Shown here piece by piece: positions 6,609 to 56,681 of a stretch of 64,000 bases of DNA. Made by a program: the position numbers and the translations under genes. Under the pieces are notes generated by a model, which ran no database searches, had not been told where the DNA came from, and worked only from the letters and a program-made list of their open reading frames with translations. This DNA is from Phyllobates terribilis (Eukaryota), in contig NW_027362773.1 of NCBI RefSeq assembly GCF_046119375.1, positions 213,838,001 through 213,902,000 on the forward strand, written 5' to 3'. Each line of letters starts with the position of its first letter. The first letter of the stretch is position 1.

Positions 6609-8232
6609 CAGTGGGTACAGAAATTATTTAGACCCCTTTAAATGTTTCACTCTTTGTTTCATTGCAGCCATTTGGTAAATTCTAAAAAGTTAATTTTTTT
6701 CTCATTATAGTACACTCTGCACCCCATCTTGGAAAAAAACAGAAATGTAGAAATTTTTGCAAATTTATTAAAAAAGAAAAACTGAAATATCCCATGGTCA
6801 TAAGTATTCAGACCCTTTGCTCAGTATTGAGTAGAAGCACCCTTTTGTGCTAGTACAGCCATGAGTCTTCTTGGGAATGATGCAACAAGTTTTTCACCCC
6901 TGGATTTGGGGATCCTCTGCCATTCTTCCTTGCAGATCCTCTCCAGTTCCATCAGGTAGGATGGTGAACGTTGGTGGACTGCCATTTTCAGGTCTCTCCA
7001 GAGATGCTCAATTGGGTTTAGGTCAGGGCTCTAGCTGGGCCAGTCAAGAATGGTCACAGAGTTGTTCTGAAGCCACTCCTTTGTTATTTTAGCTGTGTAC
7101 TTAGGGTCATTGTCTTGTTGGAAGGTGAACCTTCGGCCAAGTCTGAGGTCAGGAGCACTCTGGAAGAGGTTTTCATCGAGGATATCTCTGTACTTGGCCG
7201 CATTCATGTTTCCTTCAATTGCAACCAGTCATCCTGTCCCTGCAGCTGAAAAACACCCCCATAGCATGATGCTGCCACCACCATGTTTCACTGTTGGGAT
7301 TGTATTGGGCAGGTGATGAGCAGTGCCTGGTTTTCTCCACACATACCGCTTAGAATTATCACCAAAAAGTTCTATCTTCGTCTCATCAGACCAGAGAATC
7401 TTATTTCTCATAGTCTGGGAGTCCTTCATGTGTTTTGGAGCAAACTCTATGCGGGCTTTCATATGTCTTGCACTGAGTAGAGGCTTTTGTCTGACCATTC
7501 TGCCATAAAGGCCCGACTGGTGGAGGGCTGCAGTGATAGTTGACTTTGTGGAACTTTCTCCCATCTCCCTACTGCATCTCTGGAGCTCAGCCACAGTGAT
7601 CTTGGGGTTCTTCTTTACCTCTCTCACCAAGGCTCTTCTCCCACGATTGCTCAGTTTGGCTGGGCGGTCAGGTCTAGGAAGACTTCTGGTGGTCCCAAAC
7701 TACTTCCATTTAAGGATTATGGAGGCCACTGTGTCTTAGGAACCTTGAGTAATGCAGAAATCCTTTTGTAACCTTGGCCAGATCTGTGCCTTGCCACAAT
7801 TCGGTCTCTGAGCTCCTTGGGCAGTTCCTTTGAGCTCATGATTCTCATTTGGTCTGACATGCGCTGTGAGCTGTGAGGTCTTATATAGACAGGTGTGTGC
7901 CTTTCCAAATCAAGTCCTATCAGTTTAATTAAACACAGCTGGACTCCAATGAAGGAGTAGAACCATCTCAAGGAGGATCACAAGGAAATGGACAGCATGT
8001 GACTTAAATAAGTGTCTGGGCAAAGGGTCTGAATACTTATGACCATGTGATATTTCAGTTTTTCTTTTTTAATAAATTTGAAAAAAAATCTACATTTGTT
8101 TTTTTTCAGTCAAGATGGGGTGCAGAGTGTACTTTAATGAGAAAAAATAATAATTTTTTAGAATTTACCAAATGGCTGCAGTGAAACAGAGTGAAAAATT
8201 TAAAGGGGTCTAAATACTTTCCGTACCCACTA
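6609..8232 (-). mobile_element. Tc1/mariner transposon with long (about 200-bp) TIRs; frameshifted transposase
   Basis: TA|CAGTGGGTAC...GTACCCACTA|TA; ORF fragments MSSKELPKELRDRIVARHRSG and DETKIELFG...[15 protein letters not shown]. Confidence 0.93.
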
Positions 8233-11788: not shown

Positions 11789-14700
11789 CTGTAAAGAAGA
11801 CAATACAGATTATTCCTCTGCCCTGATCTCCAGAATCCAAATGTTTTGCAATTCAATTGGTGAAAAATTGTTCCAAACAGGAGCCGACCGGCCACCATTT
11901 TGCTGGATTCAAGAGCGCCAGGAAGGGGATAAGAAACTAAATTCTTAATGAATCGCTCAGCTTCTCACTAGGTCGTTCTGGACTTTGGCATTTCCGGCTC
12001 TGTATGTGTTGTAAAGGGTATGAAGACCTTTGCAACCAATGTTCTCATGTTGCTCCAAACTTTTGTGTGTCTACAGCTCCTCTGCAAACCTTTTGACTCA
12101 AATTTTGATGCAAATTCTACATGCAATAGATAATGTTTCCAAAGATGGGGGACGATATATACCAGGAAGGGGCCCAGTATGGGGGGAAATGTTATAACAT
12201 GGGGCAGGGGATGGGGACATTATTAGTGGAAGGGGCTCAAGATGGGGAAAAAACAATATAACATGGGACCCAGGATGGGGACATTATTAGCGGAAGGGGC
12301 CCAGGATGGGGACATTATTACTGGAAGGGGCCCAGGATGGGGGAAAAAAAAAGATATACCATGGGGCCCAGGATGGGGACATTATTACTGGAAAGGACTC
12401 AGGATGGGGGGGGGGGAATTATTACAATAACCAGGATGGATGACATTACTACAGGGGGAGCAAACACGCATGTCTTTATAGGATCTAGATTGCTACAAGG
12501 GCCAATACATCAGATGGGGGTCCAGGTCCAAATTTTGCACTGGGGTCCATCGGACTCGTTACGTCACTGCTGTCTAGCCCTTTAAATGAGAAACAAGTTG
12601 ATCCTTTTATAATCCCAAAATGAAACTCCAGCAGCGAGGTTTTTCAACAACCAGTCAACCAACAAGTGGAGAGTGGGGCTAGGCGGGCAATACTGCGCGA
12701 GGATGAGAAGCTGTAAGTGCACCGTCACACCCTATTGCACCACCAGACACACATCAAAGTGCTTTTTCTCACTGCTGGAGCACCGCTTTGGGGGTCATAA
12801 AAAGATCAGATGGTTTATCTTTTAAAGGGCTCCATAGTCATACAAATGGTAGAAGTTTCTGAGAGATTCTCTTTAAGTCTATGAAAATAAAACACAAATG
12901 AAAGGATAAAAACGGCAAGGGATTGAAACAAAGTATATGACAACGCTGCATAACTTTTAAAAGGAGATATCTGGGACTTTGTAAAATAAAAAAAATCCAT
13001 TGCTATGGATTTTGCAGTAAAAACAAAGAACGTACAAGGAGTCTCTGCTACTTACATAAGTAACTTCTCCAGTTCCCGAGTCACTTTTCCTATAACAGGG
13101 GGTCCTTGATAAGTAAGAGCAGTGTACAGCTGAACGAGCGAGGCCCCGGCACGGATCTTCTGCAGAGCGTCTGACCCACAGCTGATTCCCCCTACGCCAA
13201 CGATAGGAACTTGGCCTGAGCGAGAAAGACAACGTCAGCTTCTTGTAGGAGCCAGAAATGTCCGGCGTATAACCAGATTCATCCCTCGGTCTCACCTGAG
13301 GTCAATGCATACATTTCTCTAATAGTCTGTGTAGACAGATCTCGTAGAGGAGCTCCGCTTAATCCACCCGCCTCTATGCTACAAGGGTCCTTCAGTGTTG
13401 CGGGGCGGCTAACTGTTGTGTTGGTGACTATCAGACCCTCTATGCTGAGCTGCAGACAGAAGAGTGGTTAATATATATATATATCCCATGACAACATACA
13501 TTAGAGTAAGGGCATGATCACCGCACCTCAGTCACTACAGCGGCAATGTCTTCTTTATCACTTAGGCACAGATCGGGCGCTATCTTCACAAGTATTGCAG
13601 GCCGGTGTTCATAGGGCAGCGAATTCCGAGCGTTTATTACCTGTAATGAAGACATCGGATACTTAGATTTCTGTACCGCTACTTTTAAGTGTCAAGACTA
13701 AAAAAGCTGCATTGAAAGCCACACCTAGATAATAAAGCATCCCTAATTATAAATATATCTTGCTAATCCAAAAAGTTACAATTATCTATCCGTATATGGA
13801 GAACACTGGTGGTATAAGGTATAAACATGCCAAACACGCTGACTGCGGATCAGAATTGTTAGAAGAGAACGTCATCCACTTTATGTCGCCCGAACCATGG
13901 GGTAAGAGAAGCCCAGAGGGCGGACCCGGGGGAAAAATAAAAAAGGAGGAGAAGCCCAGAGGACGGACCCGGGGGAAAAATAAAAAAGGAGGAGAAGCCC
14001 AGAGGACGGACCCGGGGGAAAAATAAAAAAGGAGGAGAAGCCCAGAGGGCGGACCCGGGGGAAAAATAAAAAAGGAGGAGAAGCCCAGAGGGCGGAAGGT
14101 GGGCCAGTGTGGGTGGGCCTTGGGAAGGAAAGGGGGCGTGGGGGGAGAAGGCCAGAGGTTGGGAGGCCAAAGGGTAGGCCGAAAGAAAAAAGGCCAGGGC
14201 GGGGGCTCAGGAGTAGGCAAAGCATAGGGTGGGGACACTGTCTCCTGGCTTCTCTCTTGCTGACTTGGCTTTGTTCACAAATCTCTCTGTAAATACAAAT
14301 GGAGGTCCTGTCAATCGAATTCAGCTCGGCAGGAGAAACTGGAAGGAGCCTTTCAGCAGACATCACGCTGTTCCCAGCTTGTTATTCAAGCCATGTTTTA
14401 TCCAAAATTCTTAAGCGTCTCAGAGTAAAACAAAGCTTTATATAACAAGGGACCAGTCTGGAGCTGGAGAGCATGGAGCGGCTGTCAGGTTCCCTTTACA
14501 ATCTACTTCATACCTTGGCCAGCAGATGGTGCAGCTGCTCTCTGCCCTGAAGAGCTCTCAGTCCGGGGGTATTCGGGCTCGACACGTTGATAACCAGGTA
14601 GTCAGCCAGGGGTCCGAGTTCACGCACTCCCCTTGTGTAATCAGCAACTGCGTTTTCTGATATTTTATTCTTTCCCAGATTTACACCCAGTGGCATTCCC

Positions 14701-22709: not shown

Positions 22710-23234
22710 TTAAGGCGTGTTCACACATTGCATTGAATTGAAATTTTTGCAAACCTCAGCTTGTGCATATGTCCTTAGCCCAAATCTTCTACTACTTGGT
22801 TGGATCTTTACTAGAAATGATATGTCCCCGAATAATCAAATGTTTTCAGTGCAATCAACGATAGCATCTACAAGACAAATAAATATCACAGGGCAACCCC
22901 ATCAGTCATGTGCGGTGCACTGTCCAGATAATCCTCTTGCAAATCAGAGGCCGGGTATTCAAATATCAGCAAACAGACACCGCAAATATAAGATGCCGTA
23001 ATGAGAGCGGCATGTGTGCCGAGAGCTGAGCAAACACACAGCACAAACATACCGCGCGCTAATGAGAACACGCAGCAAGCACGCGAGGCAAATGTACCGA
23101 CACTACAGATCAGCAATGTGAAATGTCCAATCTGTCTTCATTACCTGTCATTATCTAACTACACTGAATGGAGAAAAGTATCGGGCCCCACGTCTTAATC
23201 ATTGAATTCAAGTTTTTTATTCAGCCACATTGCC

Positions 23235-24380
23235 CCTGGTGAATAACATCCGGCCCCGCCCTCGGTGTATAACATTCAGCCCCTCGCCTCCCAATGTATA
23301 ACCACCGACCCCTTGCCCTCAGTGTATAACCTCCGGCCTCTCACCCCCTGTGTATAACCTCCAGCCCCTCGCCCCCAGTATATAACCTCCGGCCCCTCGC
23401 CCCCAAGTGTATAACCTCTGGCCTCTCACCCCCAGTGTATAACCACCTACCCCTTGCCCCCAGTGTATAACCACCGGCCCCTTGCCCCCAGTGTATAACC
23501 TCCGGCCTCTCACCCCCTGTGTATAACCACCTACCCCTTGCCCCCAGTGCATAACCACCGGCCCCTTGCCCCCAGTGTATAACCTCCGGCCTCTCACCCC
23601 CTGTGTATAACCTCCAGCCTCTCGCCCCCAGTGTATAACCTCCGGCCCCTCGCCCCCAGTATATAACCTCCGGCCCCTCGCCCCCAAGTGTATAACTTCT
23701 GGCCTCTCACCCCCAGTGTATAACCTCCGGCCCCTCGCCCTCGGTGTATAACATTCGGCTCCTTGCCTCCCAGTGTATAACCTCCAGCTCCTCGCCCCTG
23801 GTGTATAACATCCGGCCCCTCGTCCCCGGTGTATAACATCCAGCCCCTTGCCACCGGTGTATAACATCCAGCCCCTCGCCACCAGTGTATAACATCCGGC
23901 CCCTCCCTACCAGTATACAACTTCCGGCCCCTCGCCCCCGGTGTATAACATCCAGCCCCTCACCACCGGTGTATAACATCCAGCCCCTCGCCACCGGTGT
24001 ATAACATCCGGCCCCTCGCCCCCAGTGTATAACCTCCGGCCCCTCCCTCCCAGTGTATACAACTTCCGGCCCCTCGCCCCCGTTGTTTAACATTCAGCCC
24101 CTTGCCACCGGTGTATAACATCCAGCCCCTCGCCACCGGTGTATAACATCCGGCTCATCGCCACCGGTGTATAACATCCGGTCCCTCGCCCCCAGTGTAT
24201 AACCTCCGGCCCCTCCCTCCCAGTATACTACTTCCGGCCCCTCGCCCTCGGTGTATAACATTTGGCCCCTCGCCTCCCAGTTTATAACCTCCAGCTCCTC
24301 GCCCCCAATGTATAACATGCGGCCACTCGCCCCCAGTGTATAACTTCCGGCCCCTCACCCCCAGTATATAACTTCCGGCC
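23235..24380. repeat. About 30-31-bp minisatellite (CCAGTGTATAACCTCCGGCCCCTCGC..)n
   Basis: About 37 copies; source of the spurious ORFs at 23319-24394. Confidence 0.95.
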
Positions 24381-24689
24381 TCCTGCCATGCCATCTGCCT
24401 TTACTACCATGTGACAGAACGGCCGATGGTGCAGAGCTCACTGATACCAGCGCGGTCATGTAATAGGAGCCACCGGGGTAACAAGTCCATTCATGACATT
24501 TCTTCCTCCTGAATCTTCCCCCATCACACGTGAGTGAGGAAGGAGCCACAGAAACTCAGTCACGAAGTGCAGACCCTGTAACGTTACAGAGCGGGGGGCC
24601 GACTGCTGAGGAGCGGAGGGTAGAAAAGTTACCAACGCTCTGCTGACCCCATAACTGCGGAGTTCAGACGTCCTCTGATATTAACATCA

Positions 24690-25260
24690 GCACAAACACT
24701 GTGCCCCGGCCAGGAGCATCATGGCCAAGCAGCTGCATGCAGCTGTGCATCACCAAGCACAATGCCGCGCGTCGGATGGAGGAGTCTGGATTTGGTGATT
24801 CCAGGAGAACGTTACCCCCTGACTGCATTGCGCCGCTATACACTATGGTGGAGGAGGGTAAAATTATGGGCTGTTATCAGGAGGCGGCCTCGGCCTCTTA
24901 GTTCCAGTGAAGGGAAATCTTAATTCTTCATAACAAGACATTGTGGACAATTGTAGCTTCCAGCTTTGTGGGAAGAGTTTGGGGAAGGTCCTTTTCTGTT
25001 CCCCATGACTTTGCCCAGTGCACAAGGTCCATACAGAAATGGTTGGGGGATATTAGTGGAAGAACGTAACCTGCCACACAGAGCCCAGACCTCAACCTCA
25101 TCCAACACCTTTGGGATGAACTAGAACAGAGAACAGAAATTGTGAGCCCGGGCTCTACCCAACATCAGGGTCTGATGGATGATGCTCTTCTGGATGATGG
25201 GACAAAAATGTCAATGTTAACTTCTACCTCTTATGTTGTCGTGGTGAAGTATTACAATAT
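24690..25260 (+). mobile_element. Degraded Tc1 fragment
   Basis: Remnants resembling ERYLPDCI, GPFLFxHDxAPVHK and QSPDLNLIQHLWDELE. Confidence 0.7.
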
Positions 25261-25383
25261 ACATATTCTCTGTTTCTTCTGTAAAAAAAACTTTAGTCTT
25301 TATTTATCTTCACACTGCATGAAAAACATCACAAACATGTAAAATTTCTGATACGTTATGGGCCTGCACATCCTTACTCATGG

Positions 25384-25422
25384 GCTATGAGTAAGGACAT
25401 GCATTGTCCGAAACGCGTTAGT
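25384..25422 (+). ncRNA. Minimal hammerhead-ribozyme-like motif with A3:U8 core variant (Penelope-type)
   Basis: ct-ATGAGTA-a-GGACA tgcat TGTCC-GAAA-CGCG-T-T-ag; palindromic ACGCGT stem III; stem I only 2-3 bp. Confidence 0.55.
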
Positions 25423-25691
25423 GATTTTACATGTATTTGTGATGTTTCCCTTATTGCGTGAAGATAAATAAAGAATAGAAGGTTTTTTGTTTGTTTTTTT
25501 CTTATTGAAGATACAGACACATTTTTTCTTACATTGGATTTCAACCTTCTCTCCAGGAGCCGAGCCAATTCCAAAAGGGTGTATCCAGCAAAAGATCCGG
25601 GGGAAAAAAATATTTTAAAAACAACAATATATTATAAAAATATTAAAAAGGTTTCATGTTGAAAAGGTGCAATTTCCAAGGATATGCATGA

Positions 25692-25729
25692 CCTGACGCG
25701 TTTCAAACTTATGCGTTCCTAGTCATAGT
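25692..25729 (-). ncRNA. Minimal hammerhead-ribozyme-like motif with A3:U8 core variant (Penelope-type)
   Basis: ct-ATGACTA-g-GAAC gcataa GTTT-GAAA-CGCG-T-C-ag on the minus strand. Confidence 0.55.
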
Positions 25730-26565
25730 GTGGCATGCCACATAGTGAATGGAAGTCATTTGTACGGGTGCTGGTCACGTAAGACGTAAATTAGTAAGAT
25801 CGGGGAATGGTACCTTGGTTGGGGAGGAGCGGAATGAGCATGCATCAGAAAGACCGGTGTATGCTCAGTGGAACTGAAATGTGCTAGGCTTGATGGGTGT
25901 TCCTAATAGATATCAGAAGGAGAGGCGATATCTCGGCATTGGTACATAATTTTTAATACATGTAAGTTACAAAATTGCTTAACTTCACAGTACGGGTATG
26001 TGCTGCAGTTTTTAGTATCAGACTGTGTGAGGAACTAACACTCAGTAACTGTACGAGTAGGCTGCCGAAGTGTGCAAGATTGCCAGACCAAGTTGCTGTC
26101 ATTGCTGCCATTCTGGGGTACAAGATGAGAACGAGGTAATAAAAGGACTCAAACACTCATCCATCATATGTTTAATGGAAGGGAAGGAGGTCTCATGAAA
26201 TGTTTTGTCTTGGGACCCCCAAACATCTATGGTGTAACTTGAAGCTTGTGGTCTCCAATGCAAAATTTCCTACAGTGACCCAACTATCACAAATCTTTAT
26301 TAGTATTGGTCCTCTCATATAGGCAAAAAAGGACCATTTTTTGGGGACTCACAAGGTTTCAAAGCCCGGATGCAACTCTCCTGAACCCATTCTAGTTACG
26401 CCCCTGCCATCAGGATTTGGATGAGGTGTGAGGACGAGTAAGACTATAGCCTTCCCTCTACTTTGTCTGCCCTGATTGCCTAATTTTCCTAGATACATGA
26501 CATTTTTTTGCTCCCTGACTTCCTGTTCATCTTTTCTCGGTGGGAATCCTGTAGTGTGGATTAGG

Positions 26566-26836
26566 ATGACTATACTCCAAGATCTTTCCTTCTTTTGTCT
26601 ACTCTCAGTATTTTGTCAGCTGGGTAACTCTGGCGCTTTATTATGCCCAGGAAGGGGATTTTCATTTTCAGACTCCTGTTTTCGGTTTGTGGAGCAAAGG
26701 ACTGATTTTTGGGGTGCAAGAAGGTCCTGTGGAGCATGCGGAGGGCACCTGGCCAATGTATACAATGACAACTTGGCACCTCTGGCACAACAGATAAATG
26801 AGACATCACGCTGGTGGGTCAACCAGAATGATCTAG
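26566..26836 (+). CDS. PKD1L3: PKD1L exon: signal peptide and N-half of the C-type lectin
   Basis: MTILQDLSFFCLLSVFCQLGNSG...CPGRGFSFSDSCFRF...FWGARRSCGACGGHLA...WWVNQNDL|gtgaga (phase 1). Confidence 0.88.
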
Positions 26837-29800
26837 GTGAGAGTTACTTATTTTTATGCTCTGTATGAAGGGTTCCAGCTGATTCCTGGTATTGGGATGA
26901 TATGCACCTGTGGTCGCTTTCTAGAAGGGACACAGCAGAAATCTATGTGCTTGCCATCAATGTAGCCAATTTTTAGTTTAACAAATTTCAGGAACAAATT
27001 TGCAGCATGTGAATTCACCATTTTTGCAGAAATTTCCATAACTGAAAATCGGTTCCGTTCAAGTAAATGGAGTTATTTCAGATGAATGCATGAAAATCTG
27101 CAATGTGTGAACTTAATTTAAAGGTTGCATCCACACTGGTAAAATGAGGGCAAACCCTAATATTGGACCCGTGCTACAGAATAACCTATTCTATGAGTAA
27201 GGGAAAGTCCACAGGACCAATGTCTCCACGTACGTGGAAAATGGACCGAATACTCTGATCAGACTTTAATCAGAGTTTGATCAGTTTTTCCCGGACGTGA
27301 AGAGGTAAAAAAAAGTTTCTCCATTCTGACAAACCGTGAAAGTCATCCGAGTGTGGTCCGATGTTTTTCAAGGAACCGTAGACTTTCATTGCCGATTTTG
27401 ATCCGACCCCTCGTATCAAAATCGGACATGTCTCTGATTTTTTCTGCGGACCACTCGGACTAAGGAAAAAATCGGACAGGTGCACAGCCACATAGAATAT
27501 CATAGCTACGAGCGCTATCCCTGGATAGCACTCATCCAATAAAATCGTGTGCACTGAAATTCCCATTGATCGTATTTAATTTAATAGACATTTCTGCCAA
27601 TAATCCCAATATGCAATAAATGACTGTAAGACCTCATGCACGTGGCTGTATTACAGATTTGTCTGATGTGAATCTGTCTTACATGTGAATTTGCACGCCA
27701 AGCCCCCATTTGGGTAAACCCCATTGCATGCCATATTAGAGAGACATTCGGAGAATAAGAGTTGTACACAGATGCATAGTCTATATGAAGTGCCGTTAAA
27801 GAAGAATTATAGTTTCAGGCTATGTTCACACGTTGCATTTTTGCTGTGTATTTTTCTGCAGGCAAAACCTGCTCTCTTGGCAGTAAAGAAGCTGCTTCCA
27901 AAAAGCAGGTTTTGCTGCGTTTTTTTGCTGCGTTTTTCAGGATACCTAAGTTCAGCTATGCTTCCACCACAGAAGCATGAACACAGGTCATCAATGCAAG
28001 ACATATGTGAAGCCATAACATAAAACCATTTTTAGAAAAAAGGGCAATTTGATCAAATTATTTAGTGGAAAAAGATTTATGTCTGAAAGTAACTATTCTG
28101 AACAAAAAAGTTCATATGAGTTCATAAAAAAATACAAAACTATTTAGATTTGAGAGTCCTCAGTGGTTGATACCTTTTAATGGCTAACTGAAAAGATGGT
28201 AACAAATTGCAAGCTTTCAAGACTACTCAGGTCTCTTCATCAGGCATAGTATACCACAAAATCTGAAGAGTCACATATTTATACACAATAAGACACACAA
28301 AAAATGCAATAGTGTGTCTTATTGTGTATAAATATGTGACTCTTCAGATTTTGTGGTATACTATGCCTGATGAAGAGACCTGAGTAGTCTCAAAAGCTTG
28401 CAATTTGTTACCATCTTTTCAGTTAGCCATTAAAAGGTATCAACCACTGAGGACTCTCACATCTAAATATTTTTCGATCTACTGGCTAACACGGTACAAG
28501 AATATATATTTTCGCTATAAAAAAATACACAATTACAAATGTAACAGCGGAGGGAGGTGAATTGGTCAGGAATAGTTTACCTAAGACATTGGCAGAGCAT
28601 TGAGTTTGTAGGATACTGTTTACTTTCACATATTGGTCGGCCCTTAAGTTGGTCAAGTATTGTTCAGTTTCACACCTTGGTCAGCAAATGTTTACTTTAA
28701 CACATATCACTAATTTAATTAAACTGTACTAATCCTAATTTCCCTTCTCAGGTGACGATACCAAGACATTATGGTTGAAACTTGGGAAAAAAACAAAAAT
28801 ATATCGGTTTCACATACTGCTGTACCTGCTTTTTTCTACTAAAAATGCAGCAAAACCTGATACCAGCAATTTTTGCTACTTTTTTTGCACTTACCCATTG
28901 CTTTCTATGGGTGAAAAAGCGCTGCAAAAACACTGAAAGAATTGACCTGCTACAGTTTTAAAAAACGCAGCAGTTTTCCAATTCAGTCAGGAAAAAAAAA
29001 ACAATGTGTCTGCATGAAATTTCTGAAATCTCATGGAACAGAGATCCAGCATGCATACCCTGCTCCATTCAACCCCAATCTGGGGTTCCCAGTGGTCACA
29101 CCCCAGCGATCAGCAAGTTATCCCTATCCAAAGTATAGGGAATAACTTTTTCCTGTTCTTTTTTGTTGGGAGGTGGGAATAACCCATTAACTATTAGGGT
29201 GAATTCACTCCTTTTCACTTATATGGGAGAGAGTTTGCAGTACTAATAACAGCAGTGTATGGGAGAGAGTTTGCAGTGCTAATAACAGCAATGTATGGAG
29301 CGGTGCTGCTTCTGGTCTTTGACGGACTTAGATGAATCATCAATATTAAAGTCCTGGAAAACTCTTTTAATGAGAGTGCGAGAGAGAATTTTACAACACC
29401 AAAGTTCGGGTCCTCAGTGACTTCAATGGGGTTCGGGTTCTGGTTCAAGTTCGGGTACACTTCTGGTACCCGAACCAATTTTGGATTAAAGTTCGGACGA
29501 ACCCGAACATCCACTGCTCTGCTCATCCCTAGTTGTTACGCTTCTAAAAATGTTAACAGGTTGTAACCTGGTTGTGTTTCCCTCCACAGTTTACAATCCC
29601 AGGGATAGAGACATCTTGCTTCAGATGTTGTGTCCGGTTTTAACACATAATGCGGAGATACAGTCTGCACCGTGTCTGCAACCAAACGGCTTCATCTGCC
29701 AGACAGGTAAGAAAACAGGGATGACGTGAAGACATTTCTGATATCTGCCTTGGAGAGTCTTGACGATAAAACCAAAGAGGGACAGTTCAGATAAAGTTGA

Positions 29801-55206: not shown

Positions 55207-56681
55207 TACAGACCAAAAGTTTGGACACACCTCATTTAAAGATTTTTCTGTGATTTCATGACTATGAAAATTGTACATTCACACTATGAATTAACACATG
55301 TGGAATTATATACTTAACAAAAAAGTGTGACACAACTGAAAATATGTTTTATATTCTAGGTTCTTCAAAGTAGCCACCTTTTCCTTTGATGACTGCTTTG
55401 CACACTCTTGGCATTCTCTTGATGAGCTTCAAGAGGTAGTCACCGGAAATGGTCTTCCAACAATCTTGAACGAGTTCCCAGAGATGCTTAGCACTTGTTG
55501 GCCCTTTTGCCTACACTCTGTGGTCCAGCTCACCCCAAACCATCTCGATTGGGTTCAGGTCTGGTGACTGTGGAGGCCTGGAGGTGTGTTTGGGGTCATT
55601 GTCCTGTTGAAAAATAAATGCTGGTCCAACTAAACGCAAACCGGATGGAATAGCATGCCGCTGCAAGATGCTGTGGTAGCCATGCTGGTTCAGTATGCCT
55701 TCAATTTTGAATAAATCCCCAACAGTGTAACCAGCAAAGCACCCCCACACCATCACACCTCCTCCTCCATGCTTCACGGTGGGAACCAGGCATGTAGAGT
55801 CCATCCGTTCACCTTTTCTGCGTCGCACAAAGACACGGTGGTTGGAACCAAAGATCTCAAATTTGTACTCATCAGACCAAAGAACAGATTTCTACTGGTC
55901 TAATGTCCATTCCTTGTGTTCTTTGGCCCAAACAAGTCTCTTCTGCTTGTTGCCTGCCCTTAGCAGTGGTTTCCTAGCAGCTATTTTACCATGAAGGCCT
56001 GCTGCACAAAGTCTCCTCTTAACAGTTGTTGTAGAGATGTGTCTGCTGCTAGAACTCTGTGTGGCATTGACCAAGTGTCTAATCTGAGCTGCTGTTAACC
56101 TGCGATTTCTGAGGCTGGTGAGTCGGATAAACTTATCCTCAGAAGCAGAGGTGACTCTTGGTCTTCCTTTCCTGGGGCGGTCCTCATGTGATCCAGTTTC
56201 TTTGTAGCGCTTGATGGTTTTTGCAACTGCACTTGGGGACACTTTCAAAGTTTTCCCAATTTTTCGGACTGACTGACCTTCATTTATTAAAGTAATGATG
56301 GTCACTCGTTTTTCTTTACTTAGTTGCTTTTTTCTTGCCATAATACAAATTCTAACAGTCTATTCAGTAGGACTATCAGCTGTGTATCCACCTGACTTCT
56401 GCACAACACAACTGATGGTCCCAACCCCATTTATAAGGCAAGATATCCCACTTATTAAACCCAACAGGGCACAACTGTGAAATGAAAACCATTTCCGGTG
56501 ACTACCTCTTGAAGCTCATCAAGAGAATGCCAAGAGTGTGCAAAGCAGTCATCAAAGCAAAAAGTGGCTACTTTGTGATGCCTTCAGTGTGAATGTACAA
56601 TTTTCATAGTCATGAAAATACAGAAAAATCTTTAAATGAGAAGGTGTGTCCAAACTTTTTGTCTGTACTGTATATATATAG

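What the first reader, a model, noticed from the sequence alone, without database searches (positions are those of the whole stretch)
25384..25729. Two convergent hammerhead-like motifs sharing a compensatory A3:U8 core
Seen: + strand ATGAGTA-a-GGACA/TGTCC-GAAA-CGCG-TT and minus strand ATGACTA-g-GAAC/GTTT-GAAA-CGCG-TC, about 270 bp apart. Their stem II sequences differ but both pair. Both replace CUGANGA with AUGANUA, both have one extra purine after A9, and both have a self-complementary ACGCGU stem III. Established: C3-G8 is a tertiary Watson-Crick pair that tolerates compensatory swaps, and Penelope-like elements carry minimal hammerheads that cleave as dimers via palindromic stem III. Inference: a Penelope lineage in this genome uses an A3:U8 ribozyme variant that CUGANGA-based searches would miss.
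Basis: partly seen in the sequence, partly recalled or inferred. Interest (0 to 1): 0.72.

Follow-up and report, generated by a model that had tools for sequence, protein, structure and literature searches.

The report
Relic Penelope-type hammerheads, A3:U8 core
Two short motifs upstream of a frog polycystin-like gene are real, non-random copies of the mini hammerhead self-cleaving RNA carried by Penelope-type jumping genes, with an unusual pairing-preserving swap in the catalytic core, but here they are dead, gene-less relics.

Summary
Motif A (25387-25419, +) and motif B (25726-25695, -) both fit a strict minimal-hammerhead descriptor with A3:U8 in place of C3:G8. That is 2 hits against 0.067 expected per window.

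They also carry hallmarks of Penelope-like-element (PLE) mini hammerheads that the core swap does not affect:
- one unpaired base after A9
- G10.1 opening stem II
- a palindromic ACGCGU helix III
- U16.1 followed by a non-G

- Motif A is one arm of a 206-nt head-to-head foldback. Its mirror arm holds a third, decayed A3:U8 copy.
- A canonical C3:G8 mini hammerhead pair sits in the same foldback architecture 2.5 kb away.
- No RT or GIY-YIG coding sequence and no tandem partner was found in the window.

Inverted 5'-truncated twins are a published PLE insertion signature. My reading is old, ORF-less PLE-type (or PLE-mobilised) tail fragments whose source lineage carried an inherited A3:U8 hammerhead. 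Nothing suggests these copies work now.

This scan has flagged the same variant about 16 times elsewhere in this genome. I found A3-U8 in no held paper; the natural U3-A8 swap is published. It is a new variant of a known kind, and this locus adds little to it.

The parts
25387..25419 (+). Motif A: minimal type-I hammerhead-like motif with an A3:U8 core (AUGAGUA-A-GGACA/UGUCC-GAAA-CGCG-U-U). Predicted cleavage 3' of 25419.
   Evidence: Sequence; strict descriptor hit; GAAACGCGT statistics.
25349..25381 (-). Motif A': decayed mirror copy of A. It keeps AUGAGUA-A-GG, but stem II is broken, GAAA has become AUAA and helix III ACGCGU has become ACGUAU.
   Evidence: Inverted repeats I1-I3; A versus A' alignment score 82 against 21.4 +/- 3.8.
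25283..25488 (.). 206-nt head-to-head foldback made of A' (left arm, - strand sense) and A (right arm, + strand sense), with a 5-nt centre at 25382-25386. Each arm is the hammerhead plus about 65-70 nt of downstream tail.
   Evidence: 205-209 nt at 75.6% identity; -93.1 kcal/mol, z = -14.
25695..25726 (-). Motif B: second A3:U8 minimal hammerhead-like motif (AUGACUA-G-GAAC/GUUU-GAAA-CGCG-U-C). U11.1 is the CpG-decay product expected from C11.1-G12. Predicted cleavage 3' of 25695.
   Evidence: Sequence; descriptor hit; homology to A.
25730..25741 (.). 12-nt perfect palindrome GTGGCATGCCAC just 5' of motif B. It may be the centre of a much more decayed head-to-head twin (B'), but this is not established.
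   Evidence: Sequence; mirror alignment B versus B' scored 26 against 19.3 +/- 3.5, reached by 33 of 500 shuffles, which is marginal.
28136..28474 (.). Comparison element: 339-nt head-to-head foldback whose arms each carry a canonical C3:G8 minimal hammerhead (- strand 28243-28211, + strand 28367-28399). The arms are 163 nt and 97.5% identical. They differ at the C11.1-G12 CpG, which reads TG in one arm and CA in the other.

Best explanation
These are old, ORF-less tail fragments of Penelope-like retroelements, or of short non-autonomous elements that PLE enzymes mobilise. Their RNA carried a minimal type-I hammerhead with A3:U8 in place of the C3:G8 core pair.

How the source element's motif would work (inferred): two sense copies in tandem or multimeric transcripts pair through the self-complementary ACGCGU. 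That builds a shared helix III. Each copy adds its own helix II and a very short helix I. The A3:U8 pair stands in for C3:G8, and the RNA is cut 3' of position 17.

How the locus arose (inferred): motif A and its mirror A' went in as a head-to-head pair of 5'-truncated copies, with tails outward and truncated heads at the centre. That product is expected if both target strands prime reverse transcription, or if the enzyme switches onto its own cDNA. Motif B is a separate, more diverged insertion pointing the other way.

What is shown: the motifs, their non-randomness, the foldback, the third copy, the neighbouring canonical twin, and the absence of coding sequence.

Current activity: at this locus the copies are relics. 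A is intact by descriptor but has no sense partner on its strand and is sequestered by A'. A' and B carry disabling or weakening changes.
For: - Descriptor: 2 A3:U8 hits against 0.067 expected. GAAACGCGT 2 against 0.09.
- Both motifs show the extra features that Cervera and de la Pena list as emerging in PLE min-HHRs without being in their descriptor: a base between 9 and 10.1, G10.1-C11.1, and palindromic 15.2-16.2/loop 3 (PMC4209133). The same paper reports dual min-HHRs 100-700 bp apart on opposite strands and a natural U3-A8 covariant.
- A3 and U8 each differ from the canonical C3 and G8 by a transversion, and A, A' and B share both. A and B differ only at tolerated places: N7, the extra base, loop II, H17 and one compensated stem II pair (G10.2-C11.2 versus A-U). 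Their flanks are unalignable.
- B's only stem II defect, U11.1, sits at a CpG. The canonical twin shows both decay products of that same CpG.
- Head-to-head inverted 5'-truncated copies are described as typical of PLE insertions (PMC8557442). A PLE protein cleaves and extends both target strands in vitro, and its RT starts near the hammerhead at the pLTR-ORF junction (PMC11167929).
- A canonical PLE-type min-HHR in the identical architecture lies 2.5 kb away. PLEs are said to insert into or next to earlier copies (PMC6765202).
- Leads only: earlier notes of this scan.
Against: - No RT or GIY-YIG match in any window ORF tested.
- No direct repeat or pLTR.
- No other family member in 64 kb.
- Rfam hammerhead models are silent even at E <= 10, although they also miss the canonical copy.
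- Helix I is only 2-3 bp next to the core.
- Only one compensatory change supports stem II, and the two motifs were ascertained by their core match.
- No target-site duplication was recognised.
- Copy number, expression and cleavage are untested.
- PLE min-HHRs in general cleave poorly in vitro: low activity in PMC4209133, and 1 of 9 Xenopus retrozyme dimer elements active in the 2026 preprint.
Confidence: 0.6

Rival explanations
1. Solo copies of a non-LTR retrozyme or satellite-2-like family (short, hammerhead-bearing, non-coding, PLE-dependent) rather than truncated tails of autonomous PLEs. The ribozyme mechanism would be the same, but the source would be a small tandem or circular RNA element.
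For: There is no coding sequence. The units are short, about 100-165 nt per arm. A 2026 preprint derives vertebrate retrozymes from PLE pLTRs and finds monomer copies spread evenly along Xenopus chromosomes. Earlier scan notes describe an abundant 148-base repeat that begins with this motif (unchecked).
Against: There is no tandem or direct repeat at the locus. The inverted-twin layout is documented for PLE insertions, not for retrozymes in the papers I read. The units here are shorter than the roughly 170-400 nt usual for retrozymes; that range is from my own knowledge.
Confidence: 0.2
2. Foldback DNA elements (MITE-like) or another unrelated repeat whose sequence only resembles a hammerhead, so the A3:U8 'covariation' would be coincidence.
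For: Motif A lies in a near-complete palindrome, which is the usual look of MITEs. Its core pairs with the mirror arm instead of folding as a ribozyme. There is no RT/EN, no Rfam hit and no cleavage data.
Against: The full descriptor is expected 0.07 times per window, yet it hits twice within 340 nt. B shares only the ribozyme-sized segment with A. Four features not needed for a palindrome match the PLE min-HHR consensus. A canonical CUGAUGA version sits in the same architecture nearby. No target duplication typical of a DNA transposon was seen at either foldback.
Confidence: 0.12
3. A host-selected element: a long hairpin RNA or small-RNA precursor, or a promoter-proximal regulatory element 0.85-1.2 kb upstream of the polycystin-like gene's first coding exon.
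For: The hairpin is very stable (-93 kcal/mol, z = -14). It lies upstream of the ATG at 26566. There are weak generic matches to plant miRNA hairpin models.
Against: Those Rfam matches are far below the gathering scores and fit any long hairpin. The arms have drifted to 75.6% identity. In the one related contig found, similarity to the window stops about 160 nt upstream of the ATG (L001). No RNA run holds the stretch.
Confidence: 0.05

Closest known systems
Minimal hammerhead ribozymes of Penelope-like elements (Cervera and de la Pena 2014, PMC4209133; Lunse, Weinberg and Breaker 2017, which I could not read here)
   Same: Type-I layout. An unpaired base between A9 and 10.1. G10.1(-C11.1). GAAA. 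A vestigial palindromic helix III that implies action as a dimer. Short helix I. Occurrence as scattered single motifs and as pairs 100-700 bp apart on opposite strands. Very abundant in an amphibian genome (about 9,000 in X. tropicalis).
   Different: The core reads AUGANUA, not CUGANGA (A3:U8 for C3:G8). Helix I is only 2-3 bp. No flanking PLE ORF or pLTR is present. Activity is untested.
U3-A8 natural core covariants (Cercyon PLEs of Schistosoma mansoni, about 1,300 hits, PMC4209133; several further hammerhead examples, PMC3088659)
   Same: A Watson-Crick-preserving swap of the C3:G8 tertiary pair, inherited within a lineage and missed by CUGANGA descriptors.
   Different: The orientation of the swap: the purine is at position 3 and the pyrimidine at position 8. 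I found no paper in the held library that names A3-U8 together with hammerhead.
PLE insertion architecture: 5'-truncated copies with an adjacent inverted 5'-truncated copy (Craig et al. 2021, PMC8557442); two-strand cleavage and extension by a PLE protein (PMC11167929)
   Same: A head-to-head inverted pair with tails outward, and the hammerhead close to the outer (3') part of each arm.
   Different: Here the twins are only about 100 nt each with nothing else of the element. Their perfect symmetry is more easily explained by template switching onto the nascent cDNA than by two independent priming events (inference).
Non-LTR retrozymes / newt satellite-2-type hammerhead repeats
   Same: Short non-coding hammerhead-bearing units in amphibian genomes, evolutionarily tied to PLE pLTRs, acting as dimers.
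   Different: Those are tandem arrays with canonical cores and tertiary loop contacts. This locus has no tandem unit.

Membership tests
Hammerhead ribozyme (catalytic core) | Invariant U4 G5 A6, A9, G12 A13 A14 | tested here: met
   A and B both have them. A' has lost G12 (AUAA).
Hammerhead ribozyme (catalytic core) | C3 and G8 identities | tested here: not met
   A3 and U8 in A, A' and B. The canonical neighbour at 28243 has C3/G8.
Hammerhead ribozyme (catalytic core) | Positions 3 and 8 able to form a Watson-Crick pair | tested here: met
   A:U in all three copies. Natural U3-A8 and active in vitro covariants are published (PMC3088659).
Hammerhead ribozyme (catalytic core) | A15.1-U16.1 pair and H17 (not G) at the cleavage site | tested here: met
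   A: A25413/T25418, then T25419. B: A25701/T25696, then C25695.
Hammerhead ribozyme (catalytic core) | Self-cleavage | not testable with these tools
   Needs in vitro transcription of monomer and tandem dimer.
Hammerhead ribozyme (catalytic core) | Match to Rfam hammerhead covariance models | tested here: inconclusive
   No hit at gathering score or at E <= 10. The canonical min-HHR at 28243 is also missed, so the models cannot see this class.
PLE-type minimal hammerhead | Unpaired nucleotide between A9 and 10.1 | tested here: met
   A in motif A, G in motif B, A in the canonical copy. The feature is listed in PMC4209133.
PLE-type minimal hammerhead | G10.1-C11.1 closing pair of helix II, with helix II of at least 4 bp | tested here: met
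   A has G-C and 5 bp. B has G.U and 4 bp, with the U at a former CpG.
PLE-type minimal hammerhead | Vestigial, palindromic helix III (15.2-16.2 and loop 3) | tested here: met
   ACGCGU in both. AACGCGUU, an 8-nt palindrome, in A.
PLE-type minimal hammerhead | Helix I of about 4-6 bp formed by the flanks | tested here: inconclusive
   A has 3 bp (U-A, C-G, G.U), because the unit is cut off about 2-3 nt before A3. B has 2 bp and then bulged pairs. MFE folds do not adopt the hammerhead.
Penelope-like element | RT plus GIY-YIG endonuclease ORF | tested here: not met
   No ORF of 130 aa or more within about 8 kb on either side other than the host exon and a minisatellite. Pfam found nothing in 30 ORFs, including all those flanking the motifs.
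Penelope-like element | pLTRs from partial tandem copies | tested here: not met
   0 direct-repeat families in 24500-26600.
Penelope-like element | Adjacent inverted 5'-truncated copy | tested here: met
   A'/A foldback. Same layout at 28136-28474. The feature is described in PMC8557442.
Penelope-like element | Multicopy family in the genome | not testable with these tools
The metagenome pattern scan returned only chance matches. Earlier scan notes claim abundance, which I did not check.
Non-LTR retrozyme | Tandem units each carrying a type-I hammerhead | tested here: not met
   No direct repeats. The motifs lie on opposite strands.
MITE / foldback DNA transposon | Terminal inverted repeats flanked by a fixed-length target-site duplication | tested here: inconclusive
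   Inverted arms are present. I recognised no duplication at 28136/28474 or at 25283.

The most novel reading that the evidence does not exclude
A3:U8 is not decay but the working core of a whole frog lineage of PLE-type hammerheads that cleave as dimers. That would be a natural purine-3/pyrimidine-8 version of the core pair that I found in no held paper and that every CUGANGA-based census misses.

A further twist would follow if PLE ORFs start at A6-U7-G8 of CUGAUGA. I infer this from the PAc description, where the ORF begins at stem II with the cut site 26 nt downstream. The swap destroys that AUG and creates a new one at A3-U4-G5 in the same frame, so one double change would preserve both the tertiary pair and a start codon.
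Probability: 0.3. Interest if true: 0.6.

Novelty: new variant of a known kind. Interest (0 to 1): 0.4.

Why it matters
If the A3:U8 family is real and selected, it has three consequences:
- It widens the natural sequence space of the hammerhead core, adding the reverse orientation to the known U3-A8 swap.
- It gives a ready-made natural test of the C3:G8 tertiary pair.
- Published counts of PLE and retrozyme hammerheads in amphibians, made with CUGANGA descriptors, would be underestimates.

This particular locus contributes little to that case. It holds three decayed or isolated copies without coding sequence, and the scan has already met the variant elsewhere in this genome. Its own small addition is the head-to-head twin architecture, seen for both the variant and a canonical copy within 3 kb. 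That bears on how PLE enzymes generate inverted insertions.

Tried and rejected
- Rfam at gathering score and at E <= 10: no hammerhead. Rejected as negative evidence, because the canonical copy is missed too. The plant-miRNA matches are generic long-hairpin matches.
Two later sandbox runs touched the window locally: one search used the whole window as the blastn subject for L001, and masked the places.
- Sequencing-run look-up: seven DNA runs of one organism in two studies hold at least half of the stretch. An eighth run from a third study, guessed to be RNA, holds 13% of its words. No holder is on record as RNA, so the look-up does not settle expression.
- Metagenome pattern scan with two blocks conserved between A and A': 7 loci, all chance matches.
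- Orthologous locus through the polycystin-like first exon: one 1-kb contig, 82.6% identical over the exon. Similarity ends at 26409, so it says nothing about the motifs.
- Pfam on 30 window ORFs: no RT or GIY-YIG. Only Tc1-type transposase remnants and lectin exons turned up.
- Relaxed family scan of the window and self-blastn: no further copies above background.
- Monomer and dimer MFE folds: neither favours the hammerhead fold. I do not count this as evidence either way for a vestigial-helix-III ribozyme.
- A mirror copy of B (B'): marginal at 33 of 500 shuffles, so not claimed.
- The ATG at A3-G5 as a PLE ORF start: the frame stops after 24 codons in A and 23 in A', at the same homologous TGA, and after 5 codons in B. 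Not supported here.
- Lunse et al. 2017, Przybilski and Hammann 2007, and Nelson and Uhlenbeck 2008 are not held.

Full report
**1. The observation**

Both motifs are in the sequence exactly as described.

Motif A, + strand:
- A3-A9 = ATGAGTA at 25387-25393, then an extra A at 25394.
- Helix II GGACA/TGTCC with loop TGCAT.
- GAAA at 25410-25413, CGCG, T16.1 at 25418, T17 at 25419.

Motif B, - strand:
- ATGACTA at 25726-25720, then an extra G.
- Helix II GAAC/GTTT with loop GCATAA.
- GAAA at 25704-25701, CGCG, T16.1 at 25696, C17 at 25695.

The statistics are against chance:
- The shared 9-mer GAAACGCGT occurs twice in the window against 0.09 expected.
- I wrote a strict minimal-hammerhead descriptor: any Watson-Crick 3:8 pair, 0-1 extra base, helix II of at least 4 bp, GAAA, palindromic helix III, U16.1, H17.
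- It hits three times in the window against about 0.27 expected for all four pair types together.
- Two of the hits are these A:U motifs, where 0.067 were expected and 0 of 60 shuffles had two.
- It finds nothing in 44 kb of unrelated control loci.

**2.

Motif A is not free-standing. It is the inner end of the right arm of a 206-nt imperfect palindrome, 25283-25488.
- The arms are 75.6% identical.
- As RNA it would fold into a -93 kcal/mol hairpin, z = -14.
- In that hairpin the "core" ATGAGTAAGG pairs with CCTTACTCAT at 25372-25381.

Read on the - strand, the left arm is a third copy of the unit, A'. It keeps AUGAGUA-A-GG, but helix II is broken, GAAA has become AUAA and ACGCGU has become ACGUAU. 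A' and A therefore lie head to head, 5 nt apart, each pointing outward with about 65-70 nt of tail after the motif.

A and B are significantly alike only over the roughly 40-nt motif (score 39 against 21.9 +/- 3.9, 0 of 500 shuffles). Their downstream sequences do not align. B is preceded by a perfect 12-nt palindrome (25730-25741). A mirror copy beyond it is only marginal, reached by 33 of 500 shuffles, and I do not claim it.

**3. A canonical neighbour with the same architecture**

The third descriptor hit is a textbook CUGAUGA-A-GAGAC/GUCUU-GAAA-GC-U-U at 28243-28211 on the - strand.
- It sits in a 339-nt foldback, 28136-28474, with 163-nt arms that are 97.5% identical.
- The other arm carries the mirror hammerhead at 28367-28399.
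- The arms differ at the C11.1-G12 CpG. One reads TG and the other CA, which are the two deamination products of the same ancestral CG.
- B's single helix II defect, U11.1, is at that same CpG.

So within 3 kb there are two, possibly three, head-to-head twins of hammerhead-bearing tails. One is young and canonical. One is old and A3:U8.

**4. Comparison with what is published**

Cervera and de la Pena (PMC4209133) report:
- Features that emerged without being in their descriptor: a base between 9 and 10.1, conserved G10.1-C11.1, and a palindromic 15.2-16.2/loop 3.
- Dual motifs 100-700 bp apart on opposite strands.
- A lineage with U3-A8 in place of C3-G8.
- About 9,000 min-HHRs in Xenopus tropicalis.

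A and B meet every one of these architectural points.

Other relevant papers:
- Perreault et al. (PMC3088659) report natural U3-A8 covariation and cite in vitro activity of covariants.
- Craig et al. (PMC8557442) state that PLE insertions are highly 5'-truncated and that an inverted 5'-truncated copy often lies immediately adjacent.
- The PAc study (PMC11167929) shows that a PLE protein cleaves and extends both target strands. It also shows that reverse transcription starts near the pLTR-ORF junction where the hammerhead sits.

Together these explain tails-outward twins whose arms end shortly after the motif. That last step is my inference. The near-perfect symmetry of the arms fits a switch of the enzyme onto its own cDNA at least as well as two independent primings.

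**5. What is missing for "Penelope"**

- No ORF in the window matches RT or GIY-YIG in Pfam.
- There are no direct repeats around the motifs.
- There are no further family members in 64 kb.
- Rfam sees nothing, but it also misses the canonical copy.

The link to PLEs is therefore architectural and by analogy. A non-autonomous, retrozyme-like source is a live alternative. A 2026 preprint derives vertebrate retrozymes from PLE pLTRs and finds scattered monomers in Xenopus.

**6. Is A3:U8 inherited or decay?**

C3-to-A and G8-to-U are both transversions, and A/A' and B share both. Elsewhere A and B differ only at positions the ribozyme tolerates:
- N7
- the extra base
- loop II
- H17
- one pair changed on both sides (G10.2-C11.2 versus A-U)
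- the CpG transition at 11.1

That pattern points to a common ancestor that already had A3:U8 and to constraint on the motif during the divergence of the source elements. The caveat is that the pair was ascertained by its core match, so this is not an independent test. A family-wide count is needed.

I could not make that count:
I then kept those letters out of all search tools.
- The metagenome scan gave only chance hits.
- The one related contig diverges upstream of 26409.

Earlier notes of this scan report the same variant in about 16 other windows of this genome. They place it at the tail of a dead PLE, in a 70-bp array, and in an abundant 148-base repeat. These agree with my reading, but they are leads that I did not verify.

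**7. Function at this locus**

None is likely.
- The two "convergent" motifs are on opposite strands and cannot pair in one transcript.
- A + strand RNA would bury A in the foldback.
- On the - strand, B and A' are in direct orientation 345 nt apart, but A' has lost G12 and the palindrome, and B has lost C11.1.
- No RNA run holds the stretch.
- PLE min-HHRs in general cleave weakly in vitro, and 1 of 9 Xenopus retrozyme dimer elements was active.

The site lies 0.85-1.2 kb upstream of the first coding exon (ATG at 26566) of a lectin-bearing polycystin-like gene. I see no evidence of host use.

**8. Novelty and verdict**

I found no paper in the held library that names A3-U8 together with hammerhead. 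Key subscription papers could not be read.

The variant is best called a new variant of a known kind: the PLE-type minimal hammerhead, in the mirror orientation of the known U3-A8 swap. This locus is a decayed example of it and has been anticipated elsewhere in the scan.

One speculative point is worth a test. In canonical CUGAUGA the PAc ORF appears to start at A6-U7-G8, which I infer. The swap removes that AUG and creates an in-frame AUG at A3-U4-G5. At this locus the frame closes after 24 codons in A, 23 in A' and 5 in B, so it gives no support.

Scores: interest 0.4; confidence in the main reading 0.6.

Noticed in passing
window 28136-28474: 339-nt near-perfect foldback (arms 163 nt, 97.5% identical). 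Each arm carries a canonical C3:G8 PLE-type minimal hammerhead (28243-28211 on the - strand, 28367-28399 on the + strand). The arms show the two alternative CpG-decay products (TG and CA) at C11.1-G12. It is young compared with the A'/A foldback.
   Followed up: partly
window 25387-25461 and 25381-25310: The A3:U8 swap turns core positions 3-5 into ATG, in frame with the A6-U7-G8 ATG of canonical CUGAUGA. The frame runs 24 codons in A and 23 in A' to the same homologous TGA, despite several indels between the arms.
   Followed up: partly
window 25726-25349, - strand: B and A' are in direct orientation 345 nt apart on the - strand, close to the roughly 330-nt hammerhead units that other readers report in this genome. 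The sequences after the two motifs do not align, so no tandem unit is supported.
   Followed up: partly
window 23232-24380: 28-bp minisatellite with about 41 copies, 81% matches, strongly C-rich on the + strand. It accounts for the overlapping - strand ORFs with repeated GGEGPEVIHWGRGAGGYT-like translations.
   Followed up: partly
window 13906-14096 and 12165-12409: A 43-bp tandem repeat (4.4 copies, 98% matches) and a 31/64/98-bp G-rich repeat block.
   Followed up: no
window 7232-7630 (-) and 55895-56341 (-): Two Tc1/mariner-type transposase N-terminal remnants (HTH_Tnp_Tc3_2, E = 2e-19 and 2e-13).
   Followed up: no
window 26566-26868 (+); L001: First coding exon of a polycystin-like gene (signal peptide plus the start of a C-type lectin-like domain). 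The only relative found by the word search is a 100-aa Logan fragment at 71% protein identity. Its contig aligns to the window only from 26409 onward (82.6% DNA identity), so the upstream region is not conserved.
   Followed up: partly
They overlap the outer end of the right foldback arm and the T-rich stretch after it. Nothing from them was sent to search tools.
   Followed up: no
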